A stretch of 64,000 nt of DNA. Source: Phyllobates terribilis. Taxonomy: Eukaryota. The notes under the pieces were generated by a model. It was not told the DNA's origin. It saw only the letters and a list, made by a program, of their open reading frames with translations, and made no database searches. The stretch spans positions 257,796,001 to 257,860,000 of the forward strand of contig NW_027362767.1 of NCBI RefSeq assembly GCF_046119375.1, read 5' to 3'. Each line of letters starts with the position of its first letter. Position 1 is the stretch's first letter. This document shows, one piece after another, positions 787 to 51,987 of this stretch. A program made the position numbers and the translations under genes.

Positions 787-2722
787 TCACAGTCCTCTTT
801 CTCGCAGCCTATGGCATGCGTTCACATACTGCGCTGCTATCTCCACCGCTTGCTCTTCTTCCCCCAGCAGGATATATGTTTTCTCTTCCTCCTTCATGGA
901 GTTGAAATCCGGGCAGAGATCAGAGATTCTCTTGAAGTGAGTGTCCCTCACTGCTGAGTATTTGGTGCAGTGTAGCAGGAAGTGAGTCTCATCCTCCAGG
1001 GCTTCCAGGTCACAGTGTGGGCACAGTCTGTCTTCTCTGGGCTTGTAGCTCTGTGTGAGCTGGCCAACCTCAATGGCCAGATTGTGGGCACAGGGTCTAT
1101 AGCAGCTCAGGATCTGGCTTTTTCTGGGGTCCGGGAGTTTCTCCAGGTATGGAGTCAGTCTGTATTCTCTCTGTAGACTCCGGTACATGGTCAGTTTCTG
1201 TGAGGCGATGATATAGTTCCTCCAGTCACTGACAATTCTCTCCTGGCCTTCGTCTACCATCTTCCTGATTCTGGCTTTTGTCAGGCTGCTGTGGTTGTTG
1301 TTTCGGTCAGGTTGGGTTTGGTCGAGGTGGGTTTATGTAGCAGGGCTTTATGGTGATGGGAGCTTGGATTATTAATATGTAGGTGAGACTGGAAGGACAG
1401 TGCCCTCTTCAGGACTGCTAGGTGCAGTGGGAATCTGCCCAGCTCAGCCCGACATTCACTGTTGGTGGTGCTCCGATGGACCTGGAGAAGGTGCTTACAG
1501 AATTCCAGGTGGAATATTTCTGTTGGGCTGGAATCCCACCTTGACCAGTCTGGGTATGTGTGAGAACCCCAGACTTCGCTGCCGTACAGGAGGATTGGGG
1601 TGATGATGGCATCGAAGATTTTTAGCTAGACCCTCACTGGCGGCTTCAAATAGTAGAGTTTCCTACGGATGGTATTATAGGTTTTGCAGGCCTTGTCCTT
1701 CAGGGTCTCTATGGCGTGTTTGAAGCTCCCTGACCGGTGAATTTCCAGGCCCAGGTAGGTGTTTCTGTGAGAGCGCAGTTGTTTAGCATTAATGAAGGGT
1801 GCTGGTCCAATCTTGTCTTTCTCTTCTGGAACACCATGATGTTGGTTTTGTTTGGGTTGATGGGTAATGCCCATGTGGAGCTGAATTTCTCCAAGATTTT
1901 CAGGTGGTCTTGGAGACTTTTCTCAGTTTGTGACAGCAGCAGTAGGTCATCTGCATACAGATGAGCGTCATGGAGTGTGAGACCTGGTGCCGCGGAGGAT
2001 TCCAGGGCAGTGGCAAGCTGATTGATGAAGATGTTGAAAAGCGTTGGACTTAGGCTGCAGCTCCGTGTGACTCCTCGGCTATGCTGGAAATCAGCCATTC
2101 TTTTCCCGTTCACCCTCACGCTGCAGCGGTTCTCAGTGTAGGAGCTTTTGATGACATCGTAGGTCTTTCCTCCTATTCCGCTCTCCAGCTGTTTCAGGAA
2201 CAGACCCGGGTGCCATATTGAGTCAAAGGCCTTTTTAAAGTGTACAAAACAAGCGTATATCTTCCCGTGCTTTGTGTTGTGGACGTGACTCTGAATCAGA
2301 CTGTGCAGGGTGTAGATGTGGTCGGTGGTGCGGTGGTTTGGCATGAAACCTGCTTGGCTTTTGCTGAGGACGTTGTGTTCGGTGAGGAAATGGAGGATCC
2401 TCTTGTTCAGGATACTGTTGAACAGTTTTCCCAGGTTGCTGCTGACACATATTCCTCTGTAGTTGGTAGGGTCATACCTGTCCCCACTCTTGTGGATGGG
2501 TGAGATGAGGCCTTGGTTCCAGGTGTGAGGGAAGTAGCCAGCGCTCAGCACGATGTTGAACAGTTTAGCCATTGCAGCCTTTATTTCTGGTGGGCTGTAC
2601 TTCAGCATTTCTCGTGGGATTCTATCCAGGCCGCTGGCTTTTCTACACCTTATGGAATATGGATGTTGCTTTTTGTGCCCATGTGGTTCCATAGTTCCCA
2701 GAAGGAGTTGTCTTGGAGGGCG
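787..2722 (-). mobile_element. Degenerate non-LTR retrotransposon (jockey/CR1-group-like LINE) ORF2: RT plus C-terminal Cys/His motif; 5' part cut by a gap
   Basis: Fragmented ORFs with NYRGICVSSNLGKLF, FKKAFDSIWH, SLSPTLFNIFI, LYADDL, YLGLEI and C-terminal CPHC...HFLLHC; frameshifts lie between the ORF pieces. Confidence 0.85.
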
Positions 2723-2886
2723 NNNNNNNNNNNNNNNNNNNNNNNNNNNNNNNNNNNNNNNNNNNNNNNNNNNNNNNNNNNNNNNNNNNNNNNNNNNNNN
2801 NNNNNNNNNNNNNNNNNNNNNNNNNNNNNNNNNNNNNNNNNNNNNNNNNNNNNNNNNNNNNNNNNNNNNNNNNNNNNNNNNNNNNN

Positions 2887-4504
2887 AGTTTGGACACACC
2901 TTCTCATTTAAAGATTTTTCTGTATTTTCATGACTATGAAAATTGTACATTCACACTGAAGGCATCAAAACTATGAATTAACACATGTGGAATTATATAC
3001 TTAACAAAAAAGTGTGAAACAACTGAAAATATGTCTTATATTCTAGGTTCTTCAAAGTAGCCACCTTTTGCTTTGATGACTGCTTTGCACACTCTTGGCA
3101 TTCTCTTGATAAGCTTCAAGAGGTAGTCACCGGAAATGGTCTTCCAACAATCTTGAAGGAGTTCCCAGAGATGCTTAGCACTTGTTGGCCCTTTTGCCTT
3201 CACTCTGCGGTCCAGCTCACCCCAAACCATCTCGATTGGGTTCAGGTCTGGTGACTGTGGAGGCCAGGTCATCTGGCGTAGCACCCCATCACTCTCCTTC
3301 TTGGTCAGATAGCCCTTACACAGCCTGGAGGTGTGTTTGGGGTCATTGTCCTGTTGAAAAATAAATGACGGTCCAGCTAAAAGCAAACCGGATGGAATAG
3401 CATGCCGCTGCAAGATGCTGTGGTAGCCATGCTGGTTCAGTATGCCTTCAATTTTGAATAAATCCCCAACAGTGTCACCAGCAAAGCACCCCCACACCAT
3501 CACACCTCCTCCTCCATGCTTCACGGTGGGAACCAGGCATGTAGAGTCCATCCGTTCACCTTTTCTGCGTCGCACAAAGACACGGTGGTTGGAACCAAAG
3601 ATCTCAAATTTGGACTCATCAGACCAAAGCACAGATTTCCACTGGTCTAATGTCTATTCCTTGTGTACTTTAGCCCAAACAAGTCTCTTCTGCTTGTTGC
3701 CTGTCCTTAGCAGTGGTTTCCTAGCAGCTATTTTACCATGAAGGCCTGCTGCACAAAGTCTCCTCTTAACAGTTGTTGAAGAGATGTGTCTGCTGCTAGA
3801 ACTCTGTGTGGCATTGACCTGGTCTCTAATCTGAGCTGCTGTTAACCTGCGATTTCTGAGGCTGGTGACTCGGATAAGCTTATCCTCAGAAGCAGAGGTG
3901 ACTCTTGGTCTTCCTTTCCTGGGGCGGTCCTCATGTGAGCCAGTTTCTTTGTAGCGCTTGATGGTTTTTGCAACTGCACTTGGGGACACTTTAAAAGTTT
4001 TCCCAATTTTTCGCACTGACTGACCTTCATTTCTTAAAGTAATGATGGCCACTCGTTTTTGTTTACTTAGCTGCTTTTTTTTCTTGCCATAATACAAATT
4101 CTAACAGTCTATTCAGTAGGACTATCAGTTGTGTATCCACCAGACTTCTGCACAACACAACTGATGGTCCCAACCCCATTTATAAGGCAAGAAATCCCAC
4201 TTATTAAACCTGACAGGGCACACCTGTGAAGTGAAAACCATTTCCGGTGACTACCTCTTGAAGCTCATCAAGAGAATGCCGAGAGTGTGCAAAGCAGTCA
4301 TCAAAGCAAAAGGTGGCTACTTTGAAGAACCAAGAATATAAGACATATTTTCAGTTGTTTCACACTTTTTTGTTAAGTATATAATTCCACATGTGTTAAT
4401 TCATAGTTTTGATGCCTTCAGTGTGAATGTACAATTTTCATAGTCATGAAAATACAGAAAAATCTTTAAATGAGAAGGTGTGTCCAAACTTTTGGTCTGT
4501 ACTG
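2887..4504 (-). mobile_element. Tc1-family transposon with DD38E triad (Intruder-type); transposase 4097->3036 broken by one in-frame TAG
   Basis: ~265 bp inverted repeats (2887-3140 and 4237-4504), end ...GTACTG followed by TA; ORFs 3654-4097 and 3036-3632 are in the same frame; [14 protein letters not shown] and SPDLNPIE motifs with 38 residues between the second D and E. Confidence 0.92.
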
Positions 4505-7737: not shown

Positions 7738-10700
7738 GTAAAAAAAGCAAAATCATCGGAGGCTACATCTGTCCGTCATGATGGTGGGGGTCTCCGCTCC
7801 AGGACCCTTAGTGCTACTCTTATCTGAGTTTTGTGTGTTGGGCTCTCTGTTAAATATGGAGACTTTTGCCTATACCAGGAATAAAGGGGATATCTGCGAC
7901 TTAAAAAAAAAAAAAAAGTGCTTAAAGGGGTTTTTCCATAAACAAAAGTTCATATTAATGAATAGATCTTGGAACAATAATAACTTCCATAATTGGATGT
8001 GGTTAAATAAAATGTTCCTGTGCTGAGATAATCTTATAAATGTGCCCCTGCTGTGTACTGTGTAATGGCTGTGTCTGACCATACAGGAACATGGTCTGAT
8101 CATACCACAGCTCCTGGGCAGGGAGGAAACAAAAGAGTATACAGACATTACAGCAGGGGATCACAGAGGATTCTTATTGTGAGATAAAACATTTCCCTGC
8201 CTGTTTTTAAACAATGTTTTATTTCAAAGAATCCTCTGTGGTATGATCAGACCATGCTCCTGTACAGTCAGATACAGCCATTACACAGTACACAGCAGGG
8301 GCACATTTATAGGATTATCTCAGCACAGGAACATTTTATTTAATCACATCCAATTGTGGAAGTTATTATCATTCCAAGATCTATTGATTAAAATAAACTT
8401 TTGTTCATGTGACAACCCCTTTAAGTAATAACTGGCATGTAGTAGTTAATCAAGCAACTACCTGCCTGATGTAGCCGGCATCGGTCCTTGACCGCTCCTG
8501 CTGGAGATTCAGCTGCTCCGCCGACAGAGCAGCAATTTCACTTCCTATTGAGAGGGCGGGACTACTGGCGTCATGCTGATTGACAGCCGGCTCCCCCCAA
8601 TTAGGCAGCGGAGTGCCGGCTGTCTTTCAGCATCAAGCCAGAAGTTCCACTGACGTGACGTCAGCGGAGGTCCGTGATTGATCTGTGCCGGCAGAGATCG
8701 TCGCCGGACACAACAGAGTTTGACAATGAAGCAAGGGCAAGCAATAGTAGGAATAGTAGCTGAGCTGGTACAACAGCGCCACACCTATGGTCCGGTTGTA
8801 AGTGGTACTGCATCTCAGTCTTATTCACTTCAATGGAACTAAAGCTGCAGTACCAGATCCGACCTGTGGACAGGTATGGCGTTTTATTAGAAAGATTTGA
8901 TTTACTGTGGTCAGCGATCTCTTACATCCCCTTGTGTCAATCACTATTCTCCTTTTTCCCCCATAGAGGAAACCTCTTAGGAAGTACAGCCGAAAACACC
9001 CAAAGTGCACGGCCAACTCTCAGGCTAAAAAGAAGCAGGAGTTGCCCCCTCCTGTGGAGCCCGACCAAGACCTGCAGAATGGGAAGGATGAGGAGCCGTC
9101 TCACATTGCGTAAGTCACAGCAGCGACTTGCTTGGAGATAGATGGCGGCATATGGGCATCTGTCAATTTTCCTGCCATCATCTCCTTTCACGCATAAATT
9201 CCAGGGGGTAAGTGCAGGATGCCGTAGTGGATGCCATCTGCTGTGTGCACATATACAATCTGACTTCCGACCGCATCACTCCACTGAAACTACCCTGACA
9301 CCAGCGACCTATTAACCGCCAAATCCAAGCGACACTACTCTGTCCTCCTCCTCCTGGACCTGTCATCTGCTTTCAACACAGTGGACCATTCCCTCTTACT
9401 ACAGACTCTCTCATCATCACAGACCTGGCCCTATCTTGGATCTCTTCATATCTAACAGATAGGACATTCAGTGTCTCCCACTCACACTCCACCTCCTCAT
9501 CTCGCCCCCCATCTGTCGGTGTCCCCCAACGTTCAGACCCCTGCTCTTCTCCATCTACACCTTCGGCCTAGTACAGCTGATAGAGTCTCACGGCTTCAGT
9601 ATCACCTCTATGCTGATGACACACAGATCTACCTCTCTGGACCCGATATCTCCTCCCTACTAACAAGAATACCACAATGTCCGTCGCCTATTTCATCATT
9701 CTTCTCTGCTAGATTTCTAAAACTTAACATGGATAAAACTGAATTCAACATCTTTCCTCCATCTCACTCAACCCCCCCATCTGACCTATCCATCAAAGTC
9801 AATGGCTGTCCACTCTCCCCAGTCCCACAAGCTCGCTGCCTTGGGGTAACCCTGGACTCTGATCTCTCCTTCAAACCACATATCCAAGCCCTTTCCACTT
9901 CCTGCCGACTCCAACTCAAAAATATCTCCCGGATCCGCACATTCCTCAACCATGAATCTGCAAAAACACTAGTGCACGCCCTCATCATCTCCCGCCTCGA
10001 CTACTGCAACCTCCTGCTCTGTGGTCTCCCTTCTAACACTCTCGCACCCCTCCAATCTATCCTAAACTCTGCTGCCCGACTAATCCACCTGTCCCCCCTC
10101 TATTTCCCAGCCTCTCCCCTCTGTCAATCCCTTCACTGGCTCCCCATTACCCAGGGATTCCAGTTCAAAACCCTAACCATGGCATACAAAGCCATCCACA
10201 ACCTGTCTCCTCCGCATATCTGTGACCTAGTCTCCCGTTACATACCTGCACGCAACCTCCGATCCTCACAAGATCTCCTGCTCTACTCTCCTCTTATCTC
10301 CTCTTCCCACAATCGCATACAAGATTTCTCTCGTGCATCCCCCCCTACTCTGGAATTCTCTACCCCAACATATCAGACTCTCGCTTACCGTGGAAACCTT
10401 CAAAAGGAACCTGAAGACCCACCTCTTCCGACAAGCCTACAACCTGCAGTAACCACCGCTCCACCATCCCGCTGCACGACCAGCTCTACCCTCACCTACT
10501 GTATCCTCACCCATCCCTCGTAGATGGTGTGCCCTCGCGGGCAGGGTCCTCGCTCCTCCTGTACCAGTCGCTGTCACATTGTGTTCAAGATTAGTGTAAT
10601 TGTTCTTGTATGTATACCCCTTTTTCACATATAAAGCGCCATGGAATTAATGTCGCTATAATAATAATAAATAATAATAATAATATAGGGCAGGAGGAAT

Positions 10701-27167: not shown

Positions 27168-28154
27168 TCATAGTAACAGCTTGACTCCAAATATGGACCT
27201 CACGGGTGGAGTGATGATCTGGGAAAAAATCTTCTTCAGAGACTCCTTAACTTGCTTGTTCCTTAGACTGTAAATAAAAGGGTTGAGAAGAGGAGTGAGG
27301 GTGGAGTACACAACTGTCACCGACCTATCGTCTTCCACAGAATTTGATGAGGAAGGACGGAAATATGTGAAAAAGACTGTGCCAAAGAAAAGTCCTACGG
27401 AAGTTAGATGTGAAGAACATGTGGAGAAAGTCTGGTGTCTTCCGGAGGTTGACTGCATCGTTAGGATAATTTTGAGGATCCTACAATATGAGACGACTAT
27501 GAAAATAAAGGGACTCATTGTGACCAAAGAACCTTCGGTAAACACCAAAAGGTCATATTGTGACTTATCTGAGCAGGACAAGGCAAGCAATGGGGGTAGG
27601 TCACAGAAATGCTCTCGGATCTTGTTTGGCCCGCAGAAATTCATGGAAGAAACGATACAGACGTGTAGAAGTGAATGTAGCGAGGTAAATATCCAACACA
27701 ACACGATGAGACCCAAACATCTCTTACTGTTCATAATGTAAAAGTAACGAAGAGGATTGCTGATGGCAACCAGTCTGTCGTACGCCATGATGGCCAGGAC
27801 AAAGCACTCCATGCTGGCCGTGCAAAACAGAAAGAACAGCTGGCTCATACATCCTTTAAAGGTGATCGTCTTCCTCTCCCGGAGAAGGTTGGCCAACATA
27901 AGTGGAGCTGTCACGGAGCTGAAACAAATGTCGACAAAGGAGAGGTTCCCGAGGAAGAAGTACATGGGATAGTTCAGCCTCGGATCGTTGTTGGTAGCAA
28001 TAATAATTAGTGAATTGCCCAGAAGCGTCAGTAGATACGTCAAAAGAAAACCTGCAAAGAGTGTCATCTTCTGGTCTTTGTCGTGAGAAAGACCCAGAAG
28101 AAAAAATTCAGTGACTCTTGACACATTGACTTCATCCATTGATAGCGCAGTCAT
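27168..28154 (-). CDS. Olfactory receptor (class II/gamma-like), intact single-exon ORF; start may be the Met at 28139
   Basis: PMYFFLGNLSF.D, MAYDRLVAISNPLRY, HFCDLPPLLALSCSD, STCSSH and PLLNPFIYSLRN motifs; 5'UTR acceptor TTGATACAG at 28180-28181. Confidence 0.96.
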   Translation of the reverse strand: MTALSMDEVNVSRVTEFFLLGLSHDKDQKMTLFAGFLLTYLLTLLGNSLIIIATNNDPRLNYPMYFFLGNLSFVDICFSSVTAPLMLANLLRERKTITFKGCMSQLFFLFCTASMECFVLAIMAYDRLVAISNPLRYFYIMNSKRCLGLIVLCWIFTSLHSLLHVCIVSSMNFCGPNKIREHFCDLPPLLALSCSDKSQYDLLVFTEGSLVTMSPFIFIVVSYCRILKIILTMQSTSGRHQTFSTCSSHLTSVGLFFGTVFFTYFRPSSSNSVEDDRSVTVVYSTLTPLLNPFIYSLRNKQVKESLKKIFSQIITPPVRSIFGVKLLL

Positions 28155-28721: not shown

Positions 28722-31700
28722 CAGTGGGGAAAAAAAGTATTTAGTCGGCCACCAATTGTGCAAGTTCTCCCACTTAAAAAGATGAGAGAGGCCTGTAATT
28801 GACATCATAGGTCGACCTCAACTATGAGAGACAAAATGAGAAAACAAATCCTGAAAATCACATTGTCTGATTTGGAAAGAATTTTTTTCAAATTTTGGTG
28901 GAAAATCAGTATTTGGTCAATTACAAACGAGCAAGATTTCTGGCTCTCACAGACCTGTAACTTCTCCTTTAAGAGGCTCCTCTGTCCTCCGCTCATTACC
29001 TGTAGTACGTGCACCTGTTTGAACTTGTTATCAGTATAAAAGACACCTGTCCGCAACCTCAAACAGTCACACTCCAAACTCCACTATGGTGAAGACCAAA
29101 GAGCTATCGAAGGACAACAGAAACAAAATTGTAGCCCTGCACCAGGCTGGGAAGACTGAATCTGCAATAGGCAAGCAGCTTGGTGCGAAGAAATCAACTG
29201 TGGGAGCAATAATTAGAAAATGGGACTCCACACAAGATCTCACCCCATGGGGTCAAAATGATCTCAAGAACGGTGAGCAAAAATCCCAGTACCACACGGG
29301 GGGACCTAGTGAATGACCTGCAGAGAGCTGGGACCAACGTTACACAGGCTACCATCAGTAACACACTACGCCGCCAGAGACTCAGACCCTGCAGTGCCAG
29401 ACGTGTCCCCCTGCTTAAGCTATTACATGCCCGCGCCTGTCTAAAGTTTGCTTGAGAGCATTTGGATGATCCATTATTATTATTATTATTATTAATTTAT
29501 ATAGTGCCATTGATTCCATGGTGCTGTACATAAGAAGGGGTTACATACCAAATACAGATATCACTTACAGTAAACAAACTAACAATGATAGAACAGTACG
29601 GAGGGAAGAGGACCCTGCCCTTGCGGGCTTACATTCTACAGGAATGGGGAAGGAGACAGTAGGTTGGGGGGGGTTGCAGTAGCTCCGGTGTTGTTGAGGT
29701 GGCAGCAAGCAAGGTCATGGCAGGCTGTAAGCTTGTTTGAAGAGATGGGTTTTCAGGTTTCGTCTGAAGGACCCAGGTGTGGTGGATAATCGGACATGTT
29801 GAGGCACAGAATTCCATAGGACGGGGGATATTCGGGAGAAATCTTGGAGGCGATTGAGTGAGGAACGAATAAGTGTGGAGCAAAGAAGGAGGTCTTGGGA
29901 GGACCAGAGGTTACGTGAGGGAATATATCGGGAGATTAGTTCAGAGATGTATGGAGGAGAGAGGTTATGAATGGCTTTGTAGGTCAGTGTTAGTAGTTTG
30001 AACTGGATACGCTGGGGGAATGGGAGCCAGTGAAGGGATTTGCAAAGGGGGGTAGCAGAGGAGTAGCGAGGCGAGAGATGAACTAGTCGTGCAGCAGAGT
30101 TGAGGATGGACTGGAGGGGTGCGAGAGTGTTAGCAGGTAGGCCACAGAGGAGGATGTTGCAATAATCGAGGCGGGAGATGATGAGGGCATGCACAAGCAG
30201 TTTAGTAGATTGAGGGTTGAGGAAAGGACAGATTCTGGAAATATTTTTGAGCTGGAGGCGACAGGAGGCGGCGAGAGCTTGGATGTGTGGTTTGAAGGAC
30301 AGGGAAGAGTCAAGGGTTACTCCGAGGCAGCGGATTGTCGGTACAGCGGAAAGAGTGATGTCATTTATTGTGATAGAAAGATCAGGTGGGAAAGATATGC
30401 AAGATGGGGGAAAGATAATGAGTTCAGTTTTGTCCACATTGAGCTTGAGGTAGCGGGAGGAGAAGAAGGAGGATATGGCTGCTAGATATGCTGGGATTCT
30501 GGACAGCAGAGAGGTGACATCTGGGCCAGAGAGGTAGATCTGGGTGTCATCAGCGTACAGGTACTGGAAGCCATGAGATTTTATGAGCTATCCCAGGCAA
30601 AGGGTATAGATTGAGAAGAGTAGGGATCCTAGGACAGAGCCTTGAGGGACTCCAACAGAGAGGGGGCTGGGTGAGGAGGTAGTGTGGGAGTGGTAGACGC
30701 TAAATGTGTGGTTAGAAAGGTATGAGGAGATCCAGGATAGGGCAAGGTCTTTGACGCCAAAGGCAGAGAGGATCTGTAGGAGGAGGCAGTGGTCAACTGT
30801 ATCGAAAGCAGAGGACAGGTCAAGAAGAAGGAGTACAGAGAATTGTCTGTTAGCTTTGGCTGTAAGTAAGTCATTGGTGATTTTGGTTTCGGTGGAATGG
30901 GGGGGGCGGAATCCGGATTGTCGGTTGTTGAAGAGAGAGTTAGATGAAAAGTGGGAGGAAAGTTCAGCGTGAACGTGTTGCTCAAGGAGTTTGGAGGCAA
31001 ATGGGAGCAGCGATATGGGGCGATAGCTGGACAAGGCAGTTGAGTCGAGGGATGGCTTTTTGAGGATGGGTGTGATTGTGGCATGTTTGAAGGCAGCGGG
31101 GAAAGTACCAGAAGATAGTGATAGGTTGAAGAGATGGGTTAGGGATGGGATGAGTAAGAGTAAGATGGGATGGGATCCATAAGAGTATTGGGAGACTGTC
31201 ATATGGTCAGATGAAACCAAAGTAGAACTGTTTGGTAGAAACACAACTCGTTGTGTTTGGAGGACAAAGAATGCTGAGTTGCATCCAAAGAATGCCATAC
31301 CTACTGTGAAGCATGGGGGTGGCAACATCATGCTTTGGGGCTGTTTCTCTGCCAAGAGAAAAGGATGACTGATCTGTGTACATGAAAGAATGAATGGGGC
31401 CACGTATTGTGAAATTTTGAGTGCAAACCTCCTTCCATCAGCAAGGGCATTCAACATGAAACGTGGCTGGGTCTTTCAGCATGACAATGATCCCAAGCAC
31501 ACCACCAGGGCAACGAAGGAGTGGCTTCCTAAAAAGCATTTCAAGGTCCTGGAGTGGCCTAGCCAGTCTCCAGATCTAAACCCTATAGAAAACCTTTGGA
31601 GGGAGTTGAAAGTCCGTGTTGCACAGCGACAGCCCCAAAACATCACTGCTCTAGAGGAGTCTGCAGAGAGGAATGGGCCAACATACCAGCAACAGTGTGT

Positions 31701-33204: not shown

Positions 33205-34322
33205 CATGATTGCTCATTCAGCTGGCTGTCTCTCCCACACACCGGAGCGCTCATTCGGCTGGCTTTCCCACACGCAGGAGCGTTCCTTCGGCTGTCTCTC
33301 CCGCACACATGACCACTTCTTCAGCTGGCTCTCCCACACACCGGAGCGCTCATTCGGCTGGCTTTCCCACACGCAGGAGCGTTCCTTCGGCTGTCTCTCC
33401 CGCACACATGACCACTTCTTCAGCTAGCTCTCCCACACACCGGAGCACTCATTCGGCTGGCTCTCCCACACACCGGAGCACTCATTCAGCTGGCTCTCCC
33501 ACACACAGGAGCACTTCTGCTGGCTCTTCCGCACACCGGAGCGGAGCGCTCATTCAGCTGGATCTCCCACACACTGGAGCACTTCTCCGGCTGGCTCTCC
33601 CACACACAGGAGCACTTCTTCTGCTGGCTCTCCCACACACAGGAGCACTTCTTCTGCTGGCTCTCCCACACACAGGAGCACTTCTTCAGCTGGCTCTCCC
33701 ACACACAGGAGCACTTCTTCAGCTGGCTCTCCCACACACCGGAGCACTCATTCAGCTGGCTCTCCCACACACCGGAGCACTCATTCAGCTAGCTCTCCCA
33801 CACACCGGAGCACTCATTCAGCTAGCTCTCCCACACACCGGAGCACTCATTCGGCTGGCTCTCCCACACACCGGAGCACTCATTCGGCTGGCTCTCCCAC
33901 ACACAGGAGCACTTCTCCGGCTGGCTCTCCCACACACCGGAGCACTCATTCGGCTGGCTCTCCCACACACCGGAGTGCTCATTCAGCTGGCTCTTCCACA
34001 CACCGGAGCGGAGCGCTCATTCAGCTGGATCTCCCACACACTGGAGCACTTCTCCGGCTGGCTCTCCCACACACAGGAGCACTTCTTCTGCTGGCTCTCC
34101 CACACACAGGAGCACTTCTTCTGCTGGCTCTCCCACACACAGGAGCACTTCTTCTGCTGGCTCTCCCACACACATGAGCACTTCTTCTGCTGGCTCTCCC
34201 ACACACAGGAGCACTTCTTCTGCTGGCTCTCCCACACACAGGAGCACTTCTTCTGCTGGCTCTCCCACACACATGAGCACTTCTTCTGCTGGCTCTCCCA
34301 CACACAGGAGCACTCGTTTGGC
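33205..34322. repeat. 33 bp minisatellite (CTCATTCAGCTGGCTCTCCCACACACCGGAGCA) with higher-order blocks
   Basis: About 33 units; variant block GCGGAGCGCTC..GGATCTCCC recurs at ~33540 and ~34010. Confidence 0.95.
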
Positions 34323-35259
34323 TAGCTATCCCATATACACGAGTGCTCTTTTGTCCGACTCTCCCTTACATGGCTCTCCTGTGTTCTTCTGGCAGTGCAT
34401 TATATTCCAGAAGACCATACGATCAGCAGTCCAAAATCTGACATGCCGGATAGATATTTCCCCCGCCAGTAAAATATCCAGGGCTCCCATGCACATTAGA
34501 CTGTCTGCTGAATCCATCAATATCTGTGAGTTCGGCCGACATTTAATATGTAAGGGGAGTTTAAAACTTGTTCATTAACCATAGTAAACTGCAAAGTGTA
34601 ATGGGTCATCTGAATTCCACATCAATTCAACCCATAGTGACCAGTCACTTACCTTTGATGGACTGATGGTAACCACCATAAAGACATACCACCTCGATGG
34701 AGGGACGGGATCTGTGCTACAATATAAACTATTATACAGTCCCCAGGGTCTACTTTAGAGACTAAAGCTGTATCTAGGGGGCATGAAATGCAGTATCCAG
34801 GGGATGTTAGTTATGGCTTTCATCCATAATAATCACAGTATATTGCGTAGGTTTTTATTAGAAACATCTGGTGAAACCATCTGACAAGTTGCAGATGGGA
34901 CAGTACCAATTTTGGAACATTTCTGAAATTTTCACCAAATATATAGATCTATTTCCTGAGGTTTGCTTGTTATGTCACTACATCCTCCAATCTTTACACA
35001 CCTTTTTAGTTTTGGCTCTGGACTCTCTCTGGTTCTGGACTTTTAGGGGAAAATGGACACAGAAGAGAAGAAAGAGAAAGGATGGAAAAAATGAGCAGCT
35101 GGAAAGAATAAGTGGATTGAGCTCCTTGTTGAAACATTGAAGATAATTTAATTCTCAGTCGTCATTATCTTTGAACATTTTTCCACTCTCGTCATATAGA
35201 CTTGTGTTTTGTAAAAAAGGGGAATCAATCATGTAAGGTGGTGACCCATAGTATTAAGT

Positions 35260-36675: not shown

Positions 36676-37162
36676 AGATGATCATACCTCCCAGATGATC
36701 AGTGGACAAGAGCATACCTCCCAGATGATCATACCTCCCAGATGATCATACCTCCCAGATGAGCCTACCTCCCAGATGATCAGTGGACAAGAGCATACCT
36801 CCCAGATGATCATACCTCCCAGATGATCATACCTCCCAGATGATCAGTGGACAAGAGCATACCTCCCAGAAGAGCATACCTCCCAGATGAGCATACCTCC
36901 CAGATGATCATACCTCCCAGATGAGCCTACCTCCCAGATGATCAGTGGACAAGAGCATACCTCCCAGATGATCATACCTCCCAGATGATCATACCTCCCA
37001 GATGATCAGTGGACAAGAGCATACCTCCCAGAAGAGCATACCTCCCAGATGAGCATACCTCCCAGATGATCAGTGGACAAGAGCATACCTCCCAGATGAT
37101 CATACCTCCCAGATGATCATACCTCCCAGATGATCATACCTCCCAGATGAGCCTACCTCCCA
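36676..37162. repeat. 17 bp VNTR (TGATCATACCTCCCAGA) with a recurring 13 bp insert TCAGTGGACAAGA
   Basis: Directly visible tandem units. Confidence 0.95.
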
Positions 37163-38387
37163 GCTTATACGGAAGAGAAAGAGGGACAAATCTTGAGACG
37201 TGCTGCACAACATGGCAAATATTTGATGCGTTTTTGATGCAGATGTGAAGACCCCGTTTTTAATGTGTTTTTTTATAGTACAGAAAAGTTTTGATTCTGC
37301 ACTTAAAAAAGTATCTGCTGTTTTATACATGCGTTTTTGGAAGCTCCACATAGAAGACAAGAGAGAAAAAAGCACCAAAACCGCACAGTGATTTCATGAA
37401 AACTCCGGCCCCCCGGCGTGTCTAATGACGCTGCTGAACTAGGCCGTGTTGGTGCTTTTTTTTCTCTATATGCCTCTATGTGAAGCCTAAAAAAAACACA
37501 TGTAATAAAAAAAAATTGCCATTGCATTTTTAAGTTCAGAATCAAAGCTTTTCTATAGTAATAAAAAAAAACATTAAATATGTGGATTCACATGTGCACC
37601 AAAAACCATTAAAAAAGGGAAAAATCGCCTAAAAGAAATGCAGCAAACAATCAGAGAAAATTGTTATTGTGACTTGTAGTGCGGACACCTGCAGAAAACA
37701 TGCAAAAAAATGCAGTAAAAAAAAGCAGCATTACACTATGTGTGAACATAGACTTAGCATTAGATTTTATTATGGGTATAATGGAGAAAATAAAATCAAT
37801 CACACCATTTTTTATGCCATCTAAATAATATGATCGCTGTGCTGTGTGGATTGTTATGATTACAGGGACACCAAGAATGTCCATGTAATTTGCTGATTTG
37901 TGATGTTTATTATTTTTCAAAAAAGCTTAAAATGACATTATTATAACTGTTGGGGCTGCAGCGCTGGTGTCTAATTCGGTTTGCGGCTCCCTACCAATTC
38001 AGGTAATATAACCATCATGACACTTACTTTTTTGGATGCTGAATCTCTTAGGTGACTGCCAGTCTGTATTTGTACACCTGTGTACGGACTTAATGAGGAC
38101 TATATATGAGATTTAAATAATCTTACTACTATATTCCTCTATGCTTATTTACTAATAATGGAAAAATGCAAGAGCGCAATAGGGTCTTATCCAATTAATA
38201 AATGTTACATAAGAATAAAAAAACTGCTCACCTAGTAGGGTTGTGTGGGACACAACACCTATAAAGCCTGGAGTCCAAATGCTGTAGCTTCCTATGGATG
38301 TGTCACAGATAGATGCTGGGAATGGAAGTTATTTCTAGGCTCTCTGGAGTCACGACAAACCATTAGTATGGATAAAAATGTAGGTTT

Positions 38388-38433
38388 ATTGTCTACGCAT
38401 TTCAGAGTCCACCGACTCCTTCCTCAGGACAAC
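38388..38433 (-). ncRNA. Minimal type I hammerhead ribozyme motif, copy 1
   Basis: The - strand reads GUUGUC CUGAGGA AGGAGUC GGUG GACUCU GAAA UGCG UA|GACAAU: intact core, 6 bp stem I, stem II, GUA cleavage triplet. Confidence 0.8.
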
Positions 38434-38533
38434 CATACATAAGTTGAATTGAGCTGAGTTGTTGGGAAAGGAAGTTGTTTCTGCGCTCTCTGGAGTCACG
38501 ACAAACCATTAGTATTGATAAAAATGTAGGTTT

Positions 38534-38579
38534 ATTGTCTACGCATTTCAGAGTCCACCGACTCCTTCCTCAGGACAAC
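38534..38579 (-). ncRNA. Minimal type I hammerhead ribozyme motif, copy 2 (identical, 146 nt from copy 1)
   Basis: Same sequence in a tandem duplicated unit. Confidence 0.8.
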
Positions 38580-39169
38580 CATACATAACCATACCATACC
38601 ATACATAACCAAAGGTTATGACTCCATAGAGCACAGTGTTCTTTCCCCACTCCACCTGTCCATTTGTATTTTATTAATAAAGCATTTGCACTTTACATTC
38701 TGGTCTTTGGTCTCATCCTTTGTTGGCTTTTGCCTTCACCACCCCCTCCTTTCTCAGTTATGGTATGATGAACCTGTTTTATTCTATGTCCTAGGTGGGC
38801 AGTAGTTAATATGGAGTGCTTTCCTTACATATGGATACTACTTATACTGCTTTTCTCTGGATGCTTCCCTTACCTAATACAGGCACATAGAAATACACTG
38901 ATATATACAGATATATCTCTTTGTATCAGCATAATCTGCCTGTGAGTTCAAAACCTGCAAACCAGCTTCAAGTATAGGAAATCCTCACATTCTTATAAGT
39001 GTGGGCTACGACTCACAGCTTTAGCAGCTGCCTGCAATGATACAAGTTGTTAGTTTGATTCCATTGGAGGCCTGATCTCAAGAAAAGAAAAGACTTGTTG
39101 GTTTAATTAATTTAAGTGTGAGCAAAAAGATGCTGGCTCAGCCCCTTGAGGAGAAGGAGCTACAAAGTG

Positions 39170-39221
39170 ATGAAGAGAGAAGACGAGAGAGAAGACGAGA
39201 GAGAAAGAGAGAAAGAGAGAA

Positions 39222-39252
<31 letters not shown>
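39170..39252. repeat. GA-rich microsatellite
   Basis: (GA/GAGAAA)n tract. Confidence 0.9.
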
Positions 39253-39253
<1 letters not shown>

Positions 39254-39866: not shown

Positions 39867-40635
39867 CAGTACAGACCAAAAGTTTGGACACACCTTCTCA
39901 TTTAAAGATTTTTCTGTATTTTCATGACTATGAAAATTGTACATTCACACTGAAGGCACCAAAACTATGAATTAACACATGTGGAATTATATACTTAACA
40001 AAAAAGTGTGAAACAACTGAAAATATGTCTTATATTCTAGGTTCTTCAAAGTAGCCACCTTTTGCTTTGATGACTGCTTTGCACACTCTTGGCATTCTCT
40101 TGATGAGCTTCAAGAGGTAGTCACCGGAAATGGTCTTCCAACAATCTTGAAGGAGTTCCCAGAGATGCTGAGCACTTGTTGGCCCTTTGGCCTTCACTCT
40201 GCGGTCCAGCTCACCCCAAACCATCTCGATTGGGTTCAGGTCTGGTGACTGTGGAGGCCAGGTCATCTGGCGTAGCACCCCATCATTCTTCTTCTTGGTC
40301 AAATAGCCCTTACACAGCCTGGAGGTGTGTTTGGGGTCATTGTCCTGTTGAAAAATAAATGATGGTCCAACTAAACGCAAACCGGATAGAATAGCATGCC
40401 GCTGCAAGATGCTGTGGTAGCCATGCTGGTTCAGTATGCCTTCAATTTTGAATAAATCCCCAACAGTGTCACCAGCAAAGCACCCCAACACCATCACACC
40501 TCCTCCTCCATGCTTCACGGTGGGAACCAGGCATGTAGAGTCCATCCGTTCACCTTTTCTGCGTCGCACAAAGACACGGTGGTTGGAACCAAAGATCTCA
40601 AATTTGGACTCATCAGACCAAAGGACAGATTTCCA
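39867..40635 (-). mobile_element. Truncated second copy of the DD38E Tc1 element (one TIR plus the catalytic half)
   Basis: TA|CAGTACAGACC terminus; ORF 40030-40569 is nearly identical to 3036-3632; sequence breaks off at ~40635. Confidence 0.92.
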
Positions 40636-41157: not shown

Positions 41158-41722
41158 GCACTAGAAACAATTCAATGTCCTCAAAATACACAAGGTCCCT
41201 TCATACAAAAGCATATATCCTATAGACTACAATGAAGGAGTACTAGACCCAAAAGTATTAAAAAATCATCAATTTTATTATCAGATATATAAATCACATA
41301 GTATATATAAAAACATACATATACAAGATGCAGACAAAACTGACAAAAGGTAAGGGGACTGTGATGGTGCAACCACTATAAATCGTACATCAGTATAACC
41401 ATCTGCAGTAAAGTGCTAATTAATACCATTAAAGAGCTAGTGCCCCTAAATACACAGCAATATATGGCCACCCATATAAATCAAAATCACAGATATAGCC
41501 ATATGATGAACCTCATGACAATATTATATCTAAAAGAATAAAGGCAACATCACTCTAATTACACATGGGTGCCCATATATATCTTCTTTTATTGAATAAA
41601 TAGGACACTCAAACATAACACCATACCTGCAGCCATTGTGGAACTGTATGTGGAGACACCAAGTGTCATGTCCCCCTACACTCTGACGCGTTTCACTGTC
41701 CACAGCAGTTTCATCTGGAGGT
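41158..41722 (-). mobile_element. 565 bp insertion with a hammerhead-like motif, flanked by a 15 bp direct repeat that includes the OR stop codon
   Basis: CATCAATCTTATAAT at 41143-41157 and 41723-41737; the - strand at 41721-41681 reads CAGAUGA..ACUG/CAGU..GAAACGCGUC. Confidence 0.65.
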
Positions 41723-41730
41723 CATCAATC

Positions 41731-42687
41731 TTATAATATTCGCTTATTTTGATGTTTAGGATGAATTCCCATTGCTTTCCTCATGGCAAATTTTACCTCC
41801 CGGTTTCTCAAGCTATAAATAATGGGGTTCAGCATGGGCGTCATGATGGTGTAGAGCACAGCCACCAGTTTGACATCTTTGTCCATGGCGTAGGTGGAGG
41901 AGGGCCATATGTAGCTGAAGATCCCACTGCAGTAATATAGAGCCACGACAATGAAGTGAGAGGCGCAAGTGGAAAAGGTCTTTCGACGACCTTTGCTAGT
42001 GCTAATTTTTGTAACCGCAACAATGATCCGGCCATAGGTCACCAATATAAAAATGAGGGGCCCCATCCCAGCAATGACGACCACTATCATGAACAGTCCC
42101 TCCCCGACTTTTGTGTCAGAGCAAGATAACTTGAAGAGCGGAGTAACATCGCAAAAGAAATGGTCAACCTTGTTTGGACTACAAAAGTCAAGATGACATA
42201 TAGAAACAACTTGGACCACCGAGTTCAGAAGACCACTGGCCCAGCAGGCAAAGACAATTCGAATTCTTACAGCTCTACTCATAATGAGGGTGTAGTTGAG
42301 TGGAAAGCAGATGGCCACATACCTATCATAAGCCATCACCGTAAGAATATAGCACTCCACCACCATGAAAAGCTGGAAAAAGTAGAGTTGGGTGACACAT
42401 CCAGAATACGAAATGGACTTCTGGGCTGTGACCAAAATTAACAAGAGCTTGGGGACAGTGACTGAAGACAAAAGGATGTCAACCGCAGCAAGGTTGGCCA
42501 AGAAGAAGTACATAGGCGTGTGGAGTTTTTGGTCCGAGGAAATCACGCTCAGAATTACTATGTTTCCTATTACTGTGATGAGGTATATGGCCAGGAAGAT
42601 GAGAAAAAGGAGGATCTGAGGATCCGCTGTTTCTGAAAGGCCAACAATCAGAAAGATCGACACCGATGACTTGTTAGAGTATTCCAT
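41731..42687 (-). CDS. Olfactory receptor, intact (318 aa)
   Basis: LHTPMYFFLANL, MAYDRYVAICFPL, HFFCD, KTFSTCASH and PMLNPIIYSLRN motifs; acceptor CCTTTTAG at 42703-42704. Confidence 0.97.
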   Translation of the reverse strand: MEYSNKSSVSIFLIVGLSETADPQILLFLIFLAIYLITVIGNIVILSVISSDQKLHTPMYFFLANLAAVDILLSSVTVPKLLLILVTAQKSISYSGCVTQLYFFQLFMVVECYILTVMAYDRYVAICFPLNYTLIMSRAVRIRIVFACWASGLLNSVVQVVSICHLDFCSPNKVDHFFCDVTPLFKLSCSDTKVGEGLFMIVVVIAGMGPLIFILVTYGRIIVAVTKISTSKGRRKTFSTCASHFIVVALYYCSGIFSYIWPSSTYAMDKDVKLVAVLYTIMTPMLNPIIYSLRNREVKFAMRKAMGIHPKHQNKRIL

Positions 42688-48466: not shown

Positions 48467-49408
48467 TTATTTTATTCCCTTACTCCCCAGTACTTTCTTC
48501 AGTGCCCGTTTTACATCCCTGTTACGCAGGCTATAAATAAGGGGGTTCAACATGGGAGTCATGATGGTGTAGAGCACAGCCACCACCTTAACATCTTTGT
48601 CCATGGCGTAGGTGGAGGAGGGCCAGATGTAGCTGAAGATCCCACTGCCATAATATAGAGCCACCACTGTGAAGTGGGAGGCGCAAGTAGAAAATGTCTT
48701 AAAACGACCTCTCGCGGTGCTAATCTTCGTAACGGCAGAAATTATCCTGCCATAGGTGACCAAGATGAAAGTCAGCGGCCCCATCCCAGCAACCACGACT
48801 ACGATCAAAAATAAGGCCTCGCCAAGCCGAATGTCAGAGCAGGACAACTTGAATAGAGGAGTAACGTCACAGAAGAAATGGTCTACTTTATTCGGTCCAC
48901 AAAAATTAAGATGGGAGATTGAAATAGCTTGGACCAATGAGTTCACTAGACCACAAGTCCAACAGGCAATGACTGATCTGATCCTTACCTCCTGGCTCAT
49001 TATGAGAGTGTAGTTGAGCGGGAAGCAGATGGCCACATACCTGTCATAAGCCATGATGGCAAGGAGGTAGCACTCCGCCACCACGAAAAATTGAAAAAAT
49101 GAAAGTTGGGTGACACAGCCTGAGAAAGAGGTGGCCTTCTGACCAGTGATCAGAATAAACAAAAGTTTGGGGACGGTAACGGAGGAAAAGATTATGTCAA
49201 TAATGGAAAGGTTGGCTAAGAAGAAGTACATGGGTGTGTGTAGCCTCTTATCAAAGGAGATGACACCTAGAATCACAATATTGCCGATAATTGTGATGAG
49301 ATAGATGCCAAGGAAGACAAGGAAGATCATAAATTGAGGCTCTTCTGTGTCACATAGACCCACGACCAGAAAAATGGACACTGATGACTGGTTTTCAGCT
49401 TTTGCCAT
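48467..49408 (-). CDS. Olfactory receptor, intact (313 aa), close paralogue of 41731-42687
   Basis: Same OR motifs; shares PNKVDHFFCDVTPLFKLSCSD and SGIFSYIWPSSTYAMDKDVK; acceptor TTGTCCAG at 49424-49425. Confidence 0.97.
   Translation of the reverse strand: MAKAENQSSVSIFLVVGLCDTEEPQFMIFLVFLGIYLITIIGNIVILGVISFDKRLHTPMYFFLANLSIIDIIFSSVTVPKLLFILITGQKATSFSGCVTQLSFFQFFVVAECYLLAIMAYDRYVAICFPLNYTLIMSQEVRIRSVIACWTCGLVNSLVQAISISHLNFCGPNKVDHFFCDVTPLFKLSCSDIRLGEALFLIVVVVAGMGPLTFILVTYGRIISAVTKISTARGRFKTFSTCASHFTVVALYYGSGIFSYIWPSSTYAMDKDVKVVAVLYTIMTPMLNPLIYSLRNRDVKRALKKVLGSKGIK

Positions 49409-50360: not shown

Positions 50361-51987
<1,627 letters not shown>

What the first reader, a model, noticed from the sequence alone, without database searches (positions are those of the whole stretch)
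38296..38590. Tandem pair of canonical hammerhead ribozymes 146 nt apart: candidate frog retrozyme / double hammerhead
Seen: a ~146 nt unit is duplicated in tandem. Each copy carries on the - strand GUUGUC-CUGAGGA-AGGAGUC(GGUG)GACUCU-GAAA-UGCG-UA|GACAAU, i.e. all hammerhead core nucleotides, a 6 bp stem I, a stem II and a GUA cleavage site. Stem III in a monomer is only 2 bp with a 2 nt loop, but two copies of AUGCGU pair with each other over 6 bp (A-U, U.G, G-C, C-G, G.U, U-A). Established: minimal type I hammerheads of Penelope-like elements and newt satellite 2 cleave as such dimers, and tandem ribozyme repeats of a few hundred nt are described as non-autonomous retrozymes yielding small circular RNAs. 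Inference: transcription would excise a 146 nt monomer (+ coordinates 38394-38539) that could circularise and be mobilised in trans by a Penelope RT.
Basis: partly seen in the sequence, partly recalled or inferred. Interest (0 to 1): 0.82.

Follow-up and report, generated by a model that had tools for sequence, protein, structure and literature searches.

The report
Penelope-type hammerhead ribozyme tandem repeat
A short piece of non-coding vertebrate (reportedly frog) DNA is duplicated head-to-tail, and each copy carries an intact self-cutting "hammerhead" RNA motif of the minimal kind typical of Penelope-like jumping genes; this is a real but already well-described kind of repeat, and this copy may well be inactive.

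Summary
A 146-nt unit is present in about 1.85 tandem copies (38311-38588). On the minus strand each copy has an identical 46-nt type I hammerhead with every core nucleotide, a 6-bp helix I, a 6-bp helix II and a GUA cleavage site. Helix III is too short in one copy, but the two copies can pair AUGCGU with AUGCGU. Predicted cuts fall after 38540 and 38394, releasing the 146-nt RNA 38539->38394. Such a motif is expected 0.003-0.02 times per shuffled window.

It is not a canonical hammerhead. No Rfam hammerhead model matches it even at E<=10. Its unpaired A before a long helix II and its tiny palindromic helix III are the published signature of Penelope-like element (PLE) minimal hammerheads (about 9,000 in Xenopus tropicalis). 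One metagenomic relative has the same helix II about 145 nt after a decayed GIY-YIG ORF.

The locus meets the operational definition of a non-LTR retrozyme dimer. However, I found no target-site duplication, no rod-like fold of the circle, no PLE RT in the window and no second locus. Only 1 of 9 Xenopus dimers cleaved in published tests.

The scan has already noted about 22 tandem hammerhead repeats elsewhere in this genome.

Verdict: a new member of a known kind, of low interest.

The parts
38311..38588 (-). Whole tandem repeat: about 1.85 copies of a 146-nt unit (copy 1 is 38588->38443, copy 2 is 38442->38311)
   Evidence: TRF period 146, 1.9 copies, 96% matches. Two 132-nt copies at 95% identity. 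The aligned copies have 7 differences, all at aligned position 73 or later.
38534..38579 (-). Hammerhead 1 (upstream copy), type I, PLE min-HHR architecture. Helix I 38579-38574 / 38539-38534; core CUGAGGA 38573-38567; unpaired A 38566; helix II 38565-38560 / 38555-38550; GAAA 38549-38546; predicted cleavage between 38540 and 38539.
   Evidence: Sequence read; exact duplicate found; descriptor scans; 46-mer MFE -13.1 kcal/mol with helices I and II formed.
38388..38433 (-). Hammerhead 2 (downstream copy), identical in sequence to hammerhead 1. Predicted cleavage between 38394 and 38393.
   Evidence: 77.8 bits with model R1.
38394..38539 (-). Predicted 146-nt monomer RNA released by cleavage at both ribozymes (5' GACAAU ... 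GCGUA 3')
   Evidence: Coordinates follow from the two GUA| sites. Folded as a circle it gives -26.4 kcal/mol, z = -0.62 against 500 shuffles, 51% paired.
38457..38507 (-). Spacer segment partly complementary to almost the whole ribozyme (includes CUUCCUU opposite GAGGAAG and CAGAG opposite CUCUG); a possible ribozyme-masking strand
   Evidence: RNAduplex -31.0 kcal/mol against -23.9 +/- 3.4 for shuffled spacers, 33/1000 as good. The same pairing appears in the MFE folds. It is marginal, and it is lost in copy 2 (-24.8, 321/1000).
38577..38611 (-). Microsatellite-like tract (ATGGT / AACCATACAT periods) at the 5' edge of the repeat, including a 14-nt duplication of the ribozyme leader
   Evidence: TRF rows 38577-38611 and 38578-38604; direct repeat D3, 38578-38591 = 38598-38611. 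PLEs have a published insertion bias for microsatellites (PMC8557442). The link to this locus is inference.

Best explanation
This is a short non-coding repeat derived from a Penelope-like retroelement, of the class now called non-LTR retrozymes. It carries the PLE-type minimal hammerhead ribozyme in each of two head-to-tail units.

Shown here: the repeat, the two intact ribozyme cores, the PLE-type architecture (an unpaired A before a 6-bp helix II and a helix III too short to form in one copy), and the fact that the two copies can build a nested double hammerhead with a shared 6-bp helix III.

Inferred: if the minus strand is transcribed, the double hammerhead would cut after A38540 and A38394. 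That would free a 146-nt RNA with 5'-OH and 2',3'-cyclic phosphate ends, which a tRNA ligase (RtcB) could circularise.

My reading is that this particular locus is most likely a dead-end genomic copy with weak or no cleavage. The tandem itself may have come either from PLE-style head-to-tail integration or from a multimeric or circular RNA template.
For: - Repeat and identical cores.
- Rarity by chance: 0.003-0.023 motifs per shuffled window against 2 observed.
[quoted passage not shown] They work as dimers and number about 9,000 in X. tropicalis (PMC4209133).
- Independent relative L002: the same unpaired A and the same GGAGUC/GACUCU helix II, lying about 145 nt downstream of a decayed GIY-YIG ORF on the same strand. 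Model R1 scores it 24.8 bits, E 2.6e-4. Its helix I pairs at 5 of 6 positions, three of them changed on both sides relative to the window.
- Energetics: the double hammerhead is 14 kcal/mol better than two single hammerheads (-36.8 against -22.5).
- Location: intergenic in an olfactory-receptor cluster, as published for retrozymes.
- Divergence pattern: all 7 differences between the copies fall outside the 72-nt leader plus ribozyme, (60/132)^7 = 0.004.
Against: - No Rfam hammerhead model matches at the gathering score or at E<=10.
- There is only one locus in the window, and I had no access to the rest of the genome. Family size, core conservation and covariation within this genome are therefore untested.
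- The window holds no Penelope RT/GIY-YIG ORF; its RT fragments are LINE-type.
- No target-site duplication was found.
- The similarity to L002 is confined to the ribozyme, and most of it was imposed by the search pattern.
- The closing pair of helix II is G.U (or A-U with a bulged G) rather than the usual G10.1-C11.1.
Confidence: 0.78

Rival explanations
1. Active retrozyme source locus. The minus strand is transcribed, the double hammerhead cleaves efficiently, and the 146-nt monomer is circularised, accumulates as circRNA and is reverse-transcribed and inserted in trans by a Penelope RT.
For: - Both cores are intact and identical.
- The 6-bp inter-copy helix III is possible.
- The operational criteria for an 'active' dimer are met.
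- Axolotl dimers cleave far better than monomers, and RtcB circularises the products (PMC7229834).
- The spacer has marginal anti-ribozyme complementarity, as expected for a switchable viroid-like RNA.
Against: - 8 of 9 Xenopus dimers gave no cleavage in vitro, and PLE min-HHRs show low activity.
- An inactive fold is about 13 kcal/mol more stable than the double hammerhead.
- The circular monomer is not rod-like (z = -0.62).
- There is no TSD.
- Copy 2 is 3'-truncated and its spacer is degraded.
- No promoter or expression data are available.
Confidence: 0.15
2. A chance hammerhead-like motif inside an ordinary local tandem duplication, unrelated to Penelope elements or retrozymes.
For: - Rfam models are silent.
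- There is a single locus in the window.
- At 0.003-0.02 motifs per 64-kb window, a genome of gigabases would contain tens to hundreds of chance motifs, and many windows were screened.
Against: - The motif also has features outside my descriptor that match the published PLE variant: an unpaired A at the 5' end of helix II and a self-complementary AUGCGU.
- The same helix II sits behind a GIY-YIG ORF in L002.
- The motif lies in a tandem unit, as the class requires.
- All divergence between the copies avoids it.
Confidence: 0.05
3. A canonical amphibian satellite-2 / HHR_Amex1-type retrozyme hammerhead, with loop 1-loop 2 tertiary contacts and robust dimer activity.
For: - Helix III is minimal and palindromic, as in newt and axolotl hammerheads.
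- Energy minimisation predicts a possible extension of helix I through an asymmetric internal loop.
- Earlier notes report ~330-nt satellite-2-like units elsewhere in this genome (unchecked).
Against: - Helix II is 6 bp with an unpaired base, not 4 bp.
- The unit is 146 nt, not about 330.
- Rfam Hammerhead_1, which covers the canonical type, does not match.
- There is no evidence for the conserved loop nucleotides.
Confidence: 0.02

Closest known systems
Minimal hammerheads (min-HHRs) of Penelope-like elements (Cervera & de la Pena 2014, PMC4209133)
   Same: [quoted passage not shown] Such motifs are abundant in amphibian genomes, mostly away from intact PLEs.
   Different: No PLE ORF or recognisable pLTR lies next to it in this window. 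Helix I is 6 bp rather than the 4-5 bp quoted for schistosome families. It carries a 4-nt insertion (UGCG) in helix III, like the D. virilis-type variants, rather than no helix III at all.
Non-LTR retrozymes of animals (Cervera & de la Pena 2020, PMC7229834; Li, Clavereau & Pollet 2026, bioRxiv 10.64898/2026.07.22.740005)
   Same: It is a tandem repeat with a type I hammerhead in every unit, of low GC (42%), intergenic, in dimer form, and the vertebrate ribozymes need to act as dimers. The 2026 survey derives such repeats from PLE terminal sequences.
   Different: At 146 nt the unit is below the 170-400 nt circRNA range of the 2020 paper, though inside the 51-972 bp range of the 2026 survey. 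The predicted circle is not highly self-paired. No TSD was found. Copy number and expression are unknown.
Newt satellite 2 / axolotl HHR_Amex1 hammerheads (Forster et al. 1988, cited; PMC7229834)
   Same: The double-hammerhead principle applies: helix III is too weak in one copy and becomes stable when two copies pair.
   Different: Those are canonical hammerheads with a 4-bp helix II and conserved loop 1-loop 2 contacts in ~330-nt units. This one has a long bulged helix II and a 146-nt unit.
PLE partial-tandem insertions and non-autonomous PLE derivatives (Craig et al. 2021, PMC8557442)
   Same: The arrangement is head-to-tail, with a 5'-truncated copy preceding a fuller one. An edge lies in a microsatellite-like tract and no TSD is discernible.
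   Different: There is no ORF-bearing body. The inverted 5'-truncated copy typical of PLE insertions is not supported here (local alignment 26 against shuffle mean 20.7, max 30).

Membership tests
Hammerhead ribozyme (any type) | Conserved core: C3 U4 G5 A6 N7 G8 A9, G12 A13 A14, A15.1-U16.1, and H17 not G | tested here: met
   CUGAGGA ... GAAA ... UA| is read directly in both copies, and descriptor scans hit only these two sites.
Hammerhead ribozyme (any type) | Three helices around the core | tested here: met
   Helix I is 6 bp and helix II 6 bp in the 46-mer MFE. Helix III forms only between copies (AUGCGU/AUGCGU, -3.9 kcal/mol). The nested double hammerhead is -36.8 against -22.5 kcal/mol for two single ones.
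Hammerhead ribozyme (any type) | Match to a curated Rfam hammerhead covariance model | tested here: not met
   No hammerhead family is reported at the gathering score or at E<=10 on 38200-38700. Per PMC4209133, min-HHRs needed a dedicated relaxed descriptor.
Hammerhead ribozyme (any type) | Site-specific self-cleavage giving 2',3'-cyclic phosphate and 5'-OH ends | not testable with these tools
   This needs in vitro transcription. Published relatives are weak or inactive.
PLE minimal hammerhead (min-HHR) | Enlarged helix II with an unpaired nucleotide at its 5' end | tested here: met
   A38566 / A38420 is unpaired before GGAGUC-GGUG-GACUCU.
PLE minimal hammerhead (min-HHR) | Helix III absent or reduced to a short palindromic segment, implying action as a dimer | tested here: met
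   A15.1-U16.1 plus UGCG; self-complementary with two G.U pairs.
PLE minimal hammerhead (min-HHR) | Location in the terminal repeat (pLTR) of a Penelope-like element, next to an RT/GIY-YIG ORF | tested here: not met
   The window has no GIY-YIG or telomerase-like RT, and its RT ORFs best match L1 ORF2p and R2. The literature says most genomic min-HHRs are solo. The feature is met for relative L002, where Pfam GIY-YIG scores 22.6 bits about 145 nt upstream.
PLE minimal hammerhead (min-HHR) | Family-level conservation with compensatory changes in the helices | tested here: inconclusive
   Only one relative was found. L002 helix I pairs at 5 of 6 positions, 3 of them changed on both sides, and its helix II identity was imposed by the search pattern.
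Non-LTR retrozyme | [quoted passage not shown] 2026 criterion) | tested here: met
   MFE -13.1 kcal/mol; the criterion is quoted.
Non-LTR retrozyme | Monomer folds into a highly self-paired (rod-like) circular RNA | tested here: not met
   The circular MFE is -26.4 kcal/mol, z = -0.62, 51% paired against 57% in shuffles. Only a marginal ribozyme-spacer complementarity was found.
Non-LTR retrozyme | Target-site duplication flanking the insertion (when present) | tested here: not met
   No direct repeat of 8 nt or more was found at compatible edges. PLE-type insertions into microsatellites often lack discernible TSDs.
Non-LTR retrozyme | Many dispersed or tandem genomic copies, and expression as linear and circular RNA | not testable with these tools
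   There is one locus in the window, and no frog genome or transcriptome is among the searchable collections.
Newt satellite 2 / canonical amphibian type I hammerhead | 4-bp helix II and conserved loop 1-loop 2 tertiary contacts in a ~330-nt unit | tested here: not met
   Helix II is 6 bp plus a bulge and the unit is 146 nt.

The most novel reading that the evidence does not exclude
The 146-nt unit could be a compact, still-active retrozyme family of this frog. Its spacer would carry an anti-ribozyme strand that masks the hammerhead in the monomer or circle and lets it cut only in the multimeric transcript. That would make it one of the smallest animal viroid-like circRNAs, with a built-in conformational switch, and it would be mobilised by a Penelope RT.
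Probability: 0.08. Interest if true: 0.45.

Novelty: new member of a known kind. Interest (0 to 1): 0.2.

Why it matters
If it is active, the locus would add a very small (146-nt) ribozyme-processed RNA to the animal retrozyme catalogue, in a frog lineage for which I found no published hammerhead work. The class, its link to Penelope-like elements, its abundance in amphibians and the dimer mechanism are all already published. This single, partly truncated copy therefore mainly serves as an annotation: a PLE-derived hammerhead repeat. It is also a reminder that Rfam models miss this variant.

Tried and rejected
1. Rfam cmscan, at the gathering score over the whole window and at E<=10 locally: no hammerhead hit, only noise matches to sn2841 and MIR1031.
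2. An inverted, 5'-truncated copy next to the dimer (a PLE hallmark), suggested by nested inverted repeats I1, I3, I4 and I6: rejected. The best local alignment scores 26 against a shuffle mean of 20.7 and a maximum of 30, and the MAFFT alignment is unconvincing.
3. An internal half-unit duplication or second degenerate ribozyme in the spacer: rejected, because the only hit was the trivial leader overlap.
4. Primers of the nine tested Xenopus retrozymes: none match the window.
5. The exact core string in the literature: 0 papers. It is also absent from the held supplements of the 2026 preprint, and no supplements are held for the 2014 paper.
6. Public collections. The specific pattern gave 0 hits in metagenome and viral contigs. 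Relaxed patterns gave L002 (informative) and L001, L003, L004 and L005, which are bacterial contigs without a coherent helix I or II and so are chance matches.
7. The search for homologous proteins with the L002 GIY-YIG piece found nothing because there were no shared words.
8. Covariance model R1 with filters off over the window: no further ribozyme. The best other hit, at 41678-41723 (13.7 bits, E 0.33), has a CAGAUGA core.
9. A host-taxon check through the neighbouring olfactory receptor gave only 'Chordata'. 'Poison frog' rests on an earlier unchecked note.

Full report
**Observation**

The minus strand of 38100-38800 contains a head-to-tail duplication. Tandem Repeats Finder reports 38317-38588, period 146, 1.9 copies, 96% matches. 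The repeat finder gives two 132-nt copies at 95% identity, 146 nt apart.

A 46-nt segment is present twice without any mismatch, at 38534-38579 and 38388-38433 on the minus strand. Read 5' to 3' it is GUUGUC / CUGAGGA / A / GGAGUC-GGUG-GACUCU / GAAA / UGCG / UA | GACAAU. Every conserved hammerhead position is there:
- C3 U4 G5 A6 G8 A9
- G12 A13 A14
- the A15.1-U16.1 pair
- a non-G at position 17

Helix I is open-ended, so the topology is type I. The predicted cuts fall after 38540 and 38394, and the released RNA is 38539->38394, 146 nt.

There are two corrections:
- The downstream copy loses homology after about 132 nt, so there are about 1.85 units.
- Stem II is 6 bp with one unpaired base, not a clean 7-bp stem.

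**Is it more than chance?**

A structural descriptor required the core, helix II of at least 4 bp allowing one unpaired 5' base, GAAA, UH and helix I of at least 4 bp. It finds only these two sites in the window. It finds 0.023 sites per dinucleotide-shuffled window, or 0.003 when both helices must be 6 bp. Allowing the published U3-A8 and A3-U8 core covariants adds nothing.

At those rates a gigabase-size genome would still hold many chance motifs, so the statistic alone is not enough. What adds weight is that the motif sits in a tandem unit and has extra features that were not in my descriptor.

**What kind of hammerhead**

Rfam release 15 reports no hammerhead family, either at the gathering score over the whole window or at E<=10 on 38200-38700. 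'Canonical' is therefore not the right word.

The architecture matches the 'min-HHRs' that Cervera and de la Pena (2014, PMC4209133) found in the terminal repeats of Penelope-like elements. These have:
- a larger than usual helix II
- a helix III that is missing or reduced to a small palindromic segment
- action as dimers, with low self-cleavage in vitro

The paper counts about 9,000 such motifs in Xenopus tropicalis, most of them not inside full PLEs.

By contrast, the canonical amphibian hammerheads of satellite 2 and of axolotl retrozymes have a 4-bp helix II and conserved loop 1-loop 2 contacts in ~330-nt units (PMC7229834). Those features are not present here.

**An independent relative**

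No frog genome is searchable with these tools. Pattern scans of the public collections gave one informative hit, metagenome contig L002.
- On one strand L002 encodes a decayed ORF whose pieces include a GIY-YIG catalytic domain (Pfam PF01541, 22.6 bits, exactly at the gathering score).
- That is preceded by a segment reading YRKPTHTDQYL...SNHP, which from my own knowledge is typical of the C-terminal part of PLE reverse transcriptases.
- About 145 nt downstream on the same strand lies CUGAAGA / A / GGAGUC-AUGA-GACUCU / GAAA / UG / UC | CUCAAG.

The search pattern imposed the core and helix II. It did not impose the 5'-flanking helix I strand or anything 3' of GAAA, that is the UH site and the other helix I strand.

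A covariance model built from the window's ribozyme (R1) scores L002 at 24.8 bits, E 2.6e-4. It aligns its helix I with 5 of 6 pairs intact, three of them changed on both sides relative to the window. Beyond the ribozyme the two sequences are unrelated. L002 therefore supports the architecture and its PLE association, not homology of the whole unit. The other hits (L001, L003-L005) are bacterial contigs without coherent helices and are chance matches.

**How it would work**

In one copy, helix III is A-U plus a U.G pair closing a 2-nt loop, which cannot form. Between copies, AUGCGU pairs with AUGCGU over 6 bp with two G.U pairs (-3.9 kcal/mol as an isolated duplex).

In a transcript containing both ribozymes the double hammerhead is a nested structure:
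- the helix I 5' strand of copy 1 pairs with the 3' strand of copy 2
- the shared helix III lies inside that
- the helix I 3' strand of copy 1 pairs with the 5' strand of copy 2, closing the spacer

Constrained folding gave the following for the 201-nt transcript:

| Conformation | Energy (kcal/mol) |
|---|---|
| Unconstrained MFE (inactive fold) | -49.7 |
| Double hammerhead | -36.8 |
| Two separate hammerheads | -22.5 |

In the inactive MFE fold the core pairs with the spacer. That spacer-ribozyme complementarity is marginally above chance in copy 1 (-31.0 against -23.9 +/- 3.4; 33 of 1000 shuffles as good) and is lost in copy 2.

The dimer mechanism is thus structurally available. Cleavage, circularisation by a tRNA ligase (shown for axolotl and mussel retrozymes) and mobilisation by a PLE RT are all inference for this locus.

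**Evidence on activity and origin**

Several hallmarks of an active retrozyme are absent or untestable:
- The 146-nt circle is no more structured than shuffled sequence (z = -0.62, 51% paired).
- No target-site duplication was found.
- The window has no other copy.
- Its reverse-transcriptase fragments are LINE-type, with best matches to L1 ORF2p and R2.

Published tests are also sobering. Eight of nine Xenopus dimer retrozymes gave no cleavage at 6 mM Mg2+ (bioRxiv 10.64898/2026.07.22.740005). A schistosome min-HHR cleaved only weakly as a dimer or trimer.

On the other side:
- All seven differences between the two copies lie outside the 72-nt leader plus ribozyme, (60/132)^7 = 0.004.
- The locus meets the 2026 preprint's operational definition of an 'active' dimer: at least two consecutive complete HHRs and an HHR MFE below -5 kcal/mol, here -13.1.

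The tandem itself has two published possible origins that I cannot separate:
- copying of a multimeric or circular RNA
- the head-to-tail partial tandems that PLE integration and its non-autonomous derivatives produce, with 5' truncation and a microsatellite insertion bias that hides target-site duplications (PMC8557442)

The 5' edge of the repeat does abut an (ATGGT)n-like tract. An adjacent inverted copy, another PLE hallmark, was suggested by short inverted repeats but did not survive a shuffle test.

**Context**

The repeat is intergenic in an olfactory-receptor cluster, with OR ORFs at 27168-28154, 41731-42687 and 48467-49408, all on the minus strand. It lies about 3.1 kb downstream of the nearest one on the same strand. 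This agrees with the reported intergenic enrichment of retrozymes.

The neighbouring receptor shows only that the host is a chordate. An earlier follow-up note calls the genome a poison frog (unchecked). Earlier notes of this scan list about 22 tandem hammerhead repeats elsewhere in the same genome, mostly with ~330-nt units, and about 9 solo or palindromic Penelope/retrozyme-like hammerhead inserts. All are unchecked. They suggest that the class is common in this genome and that the 146-nt unit is a different, shorter family.

**Verdict**

The element is a Penelope-type minimal hammerhead repeat of the non-LTR retrozyme class. It is most likely a relic with weak or no activity (confidence about 0.78); the fully active circRNA model gets about 0.15. 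It is a new member of a known kind. I found no paper printing this core and none on hammerheads in poison frogs, but the class, mechanism and amphibian abundance are all published. Interest is low (0.2).

Noticed in passing
window 36676-37163: Complex minisatellite with nested periods of 17, 64, 81 and 162 nt (unit AGATGATCATACCTCCC), about 1.1 kb from the hammerhead repeat.
   Followed up: no
window 27168-28154, 41731-42687, 48467-49408 (all minus strand): Three intact olfactory-receptor ORFs (7tm_4, E 1e-43 to 1e-57). The hammerhead repeat is intergenic within this cluster.
   Followed up: partly
window 50666-51655 (-) and 40030-40569 (-): A Tc1/mariner-type transposase ORF of 329 aa with HTH_Tnp_Tc3_2, HTH_SB and DDE_3 domains, and a second DDE_3 fragment 1.5 kb from the repeat.
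   Followed up: no
window 1709-2950 (-), 9471-10523 (+), 30588-31457 (-): Reverse-transcriptase ORF fragments. The two I searched against solved structures (1709-2950 and 30588-31457) best match L1 ORF2p and R2, so they are LINE-type rather than Penelope-type. The third (9471-10523) has only a weak RVT_1 match and was not searched.
   Followed up: partly
window 33210-34325 (+): GC-rich 371-aa ORF with only a weak, low-complexity ActA-like Pfam hit. It may be an exon-rich or repeat region.
   Followed up: no
L002 350-1234 (minus strand): Metagenome contig Ga0126339_10126360 carries the decayed 3' end of a Penelope-like element: an RT C-terminal piece, a GIY-YIG piece at 539-853, and a minimal hammerhead at 350-393. 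This looks like eukaryotic DNA in a metagenome.
   Followed up: partly
window 41678-41723 (-): This is the best non-self hit of the ribozyme model (13.7 bits, E 0.33), just after the stop codon of an olfactory-receptor ORF. Its core reads CAGAUGA, so it is not a hammerhead.
   Followed up: yes
window 39174-39253: An (AG)n microsatellite of about 80 nt, 600 nt from the repeat.
   Followed up: no
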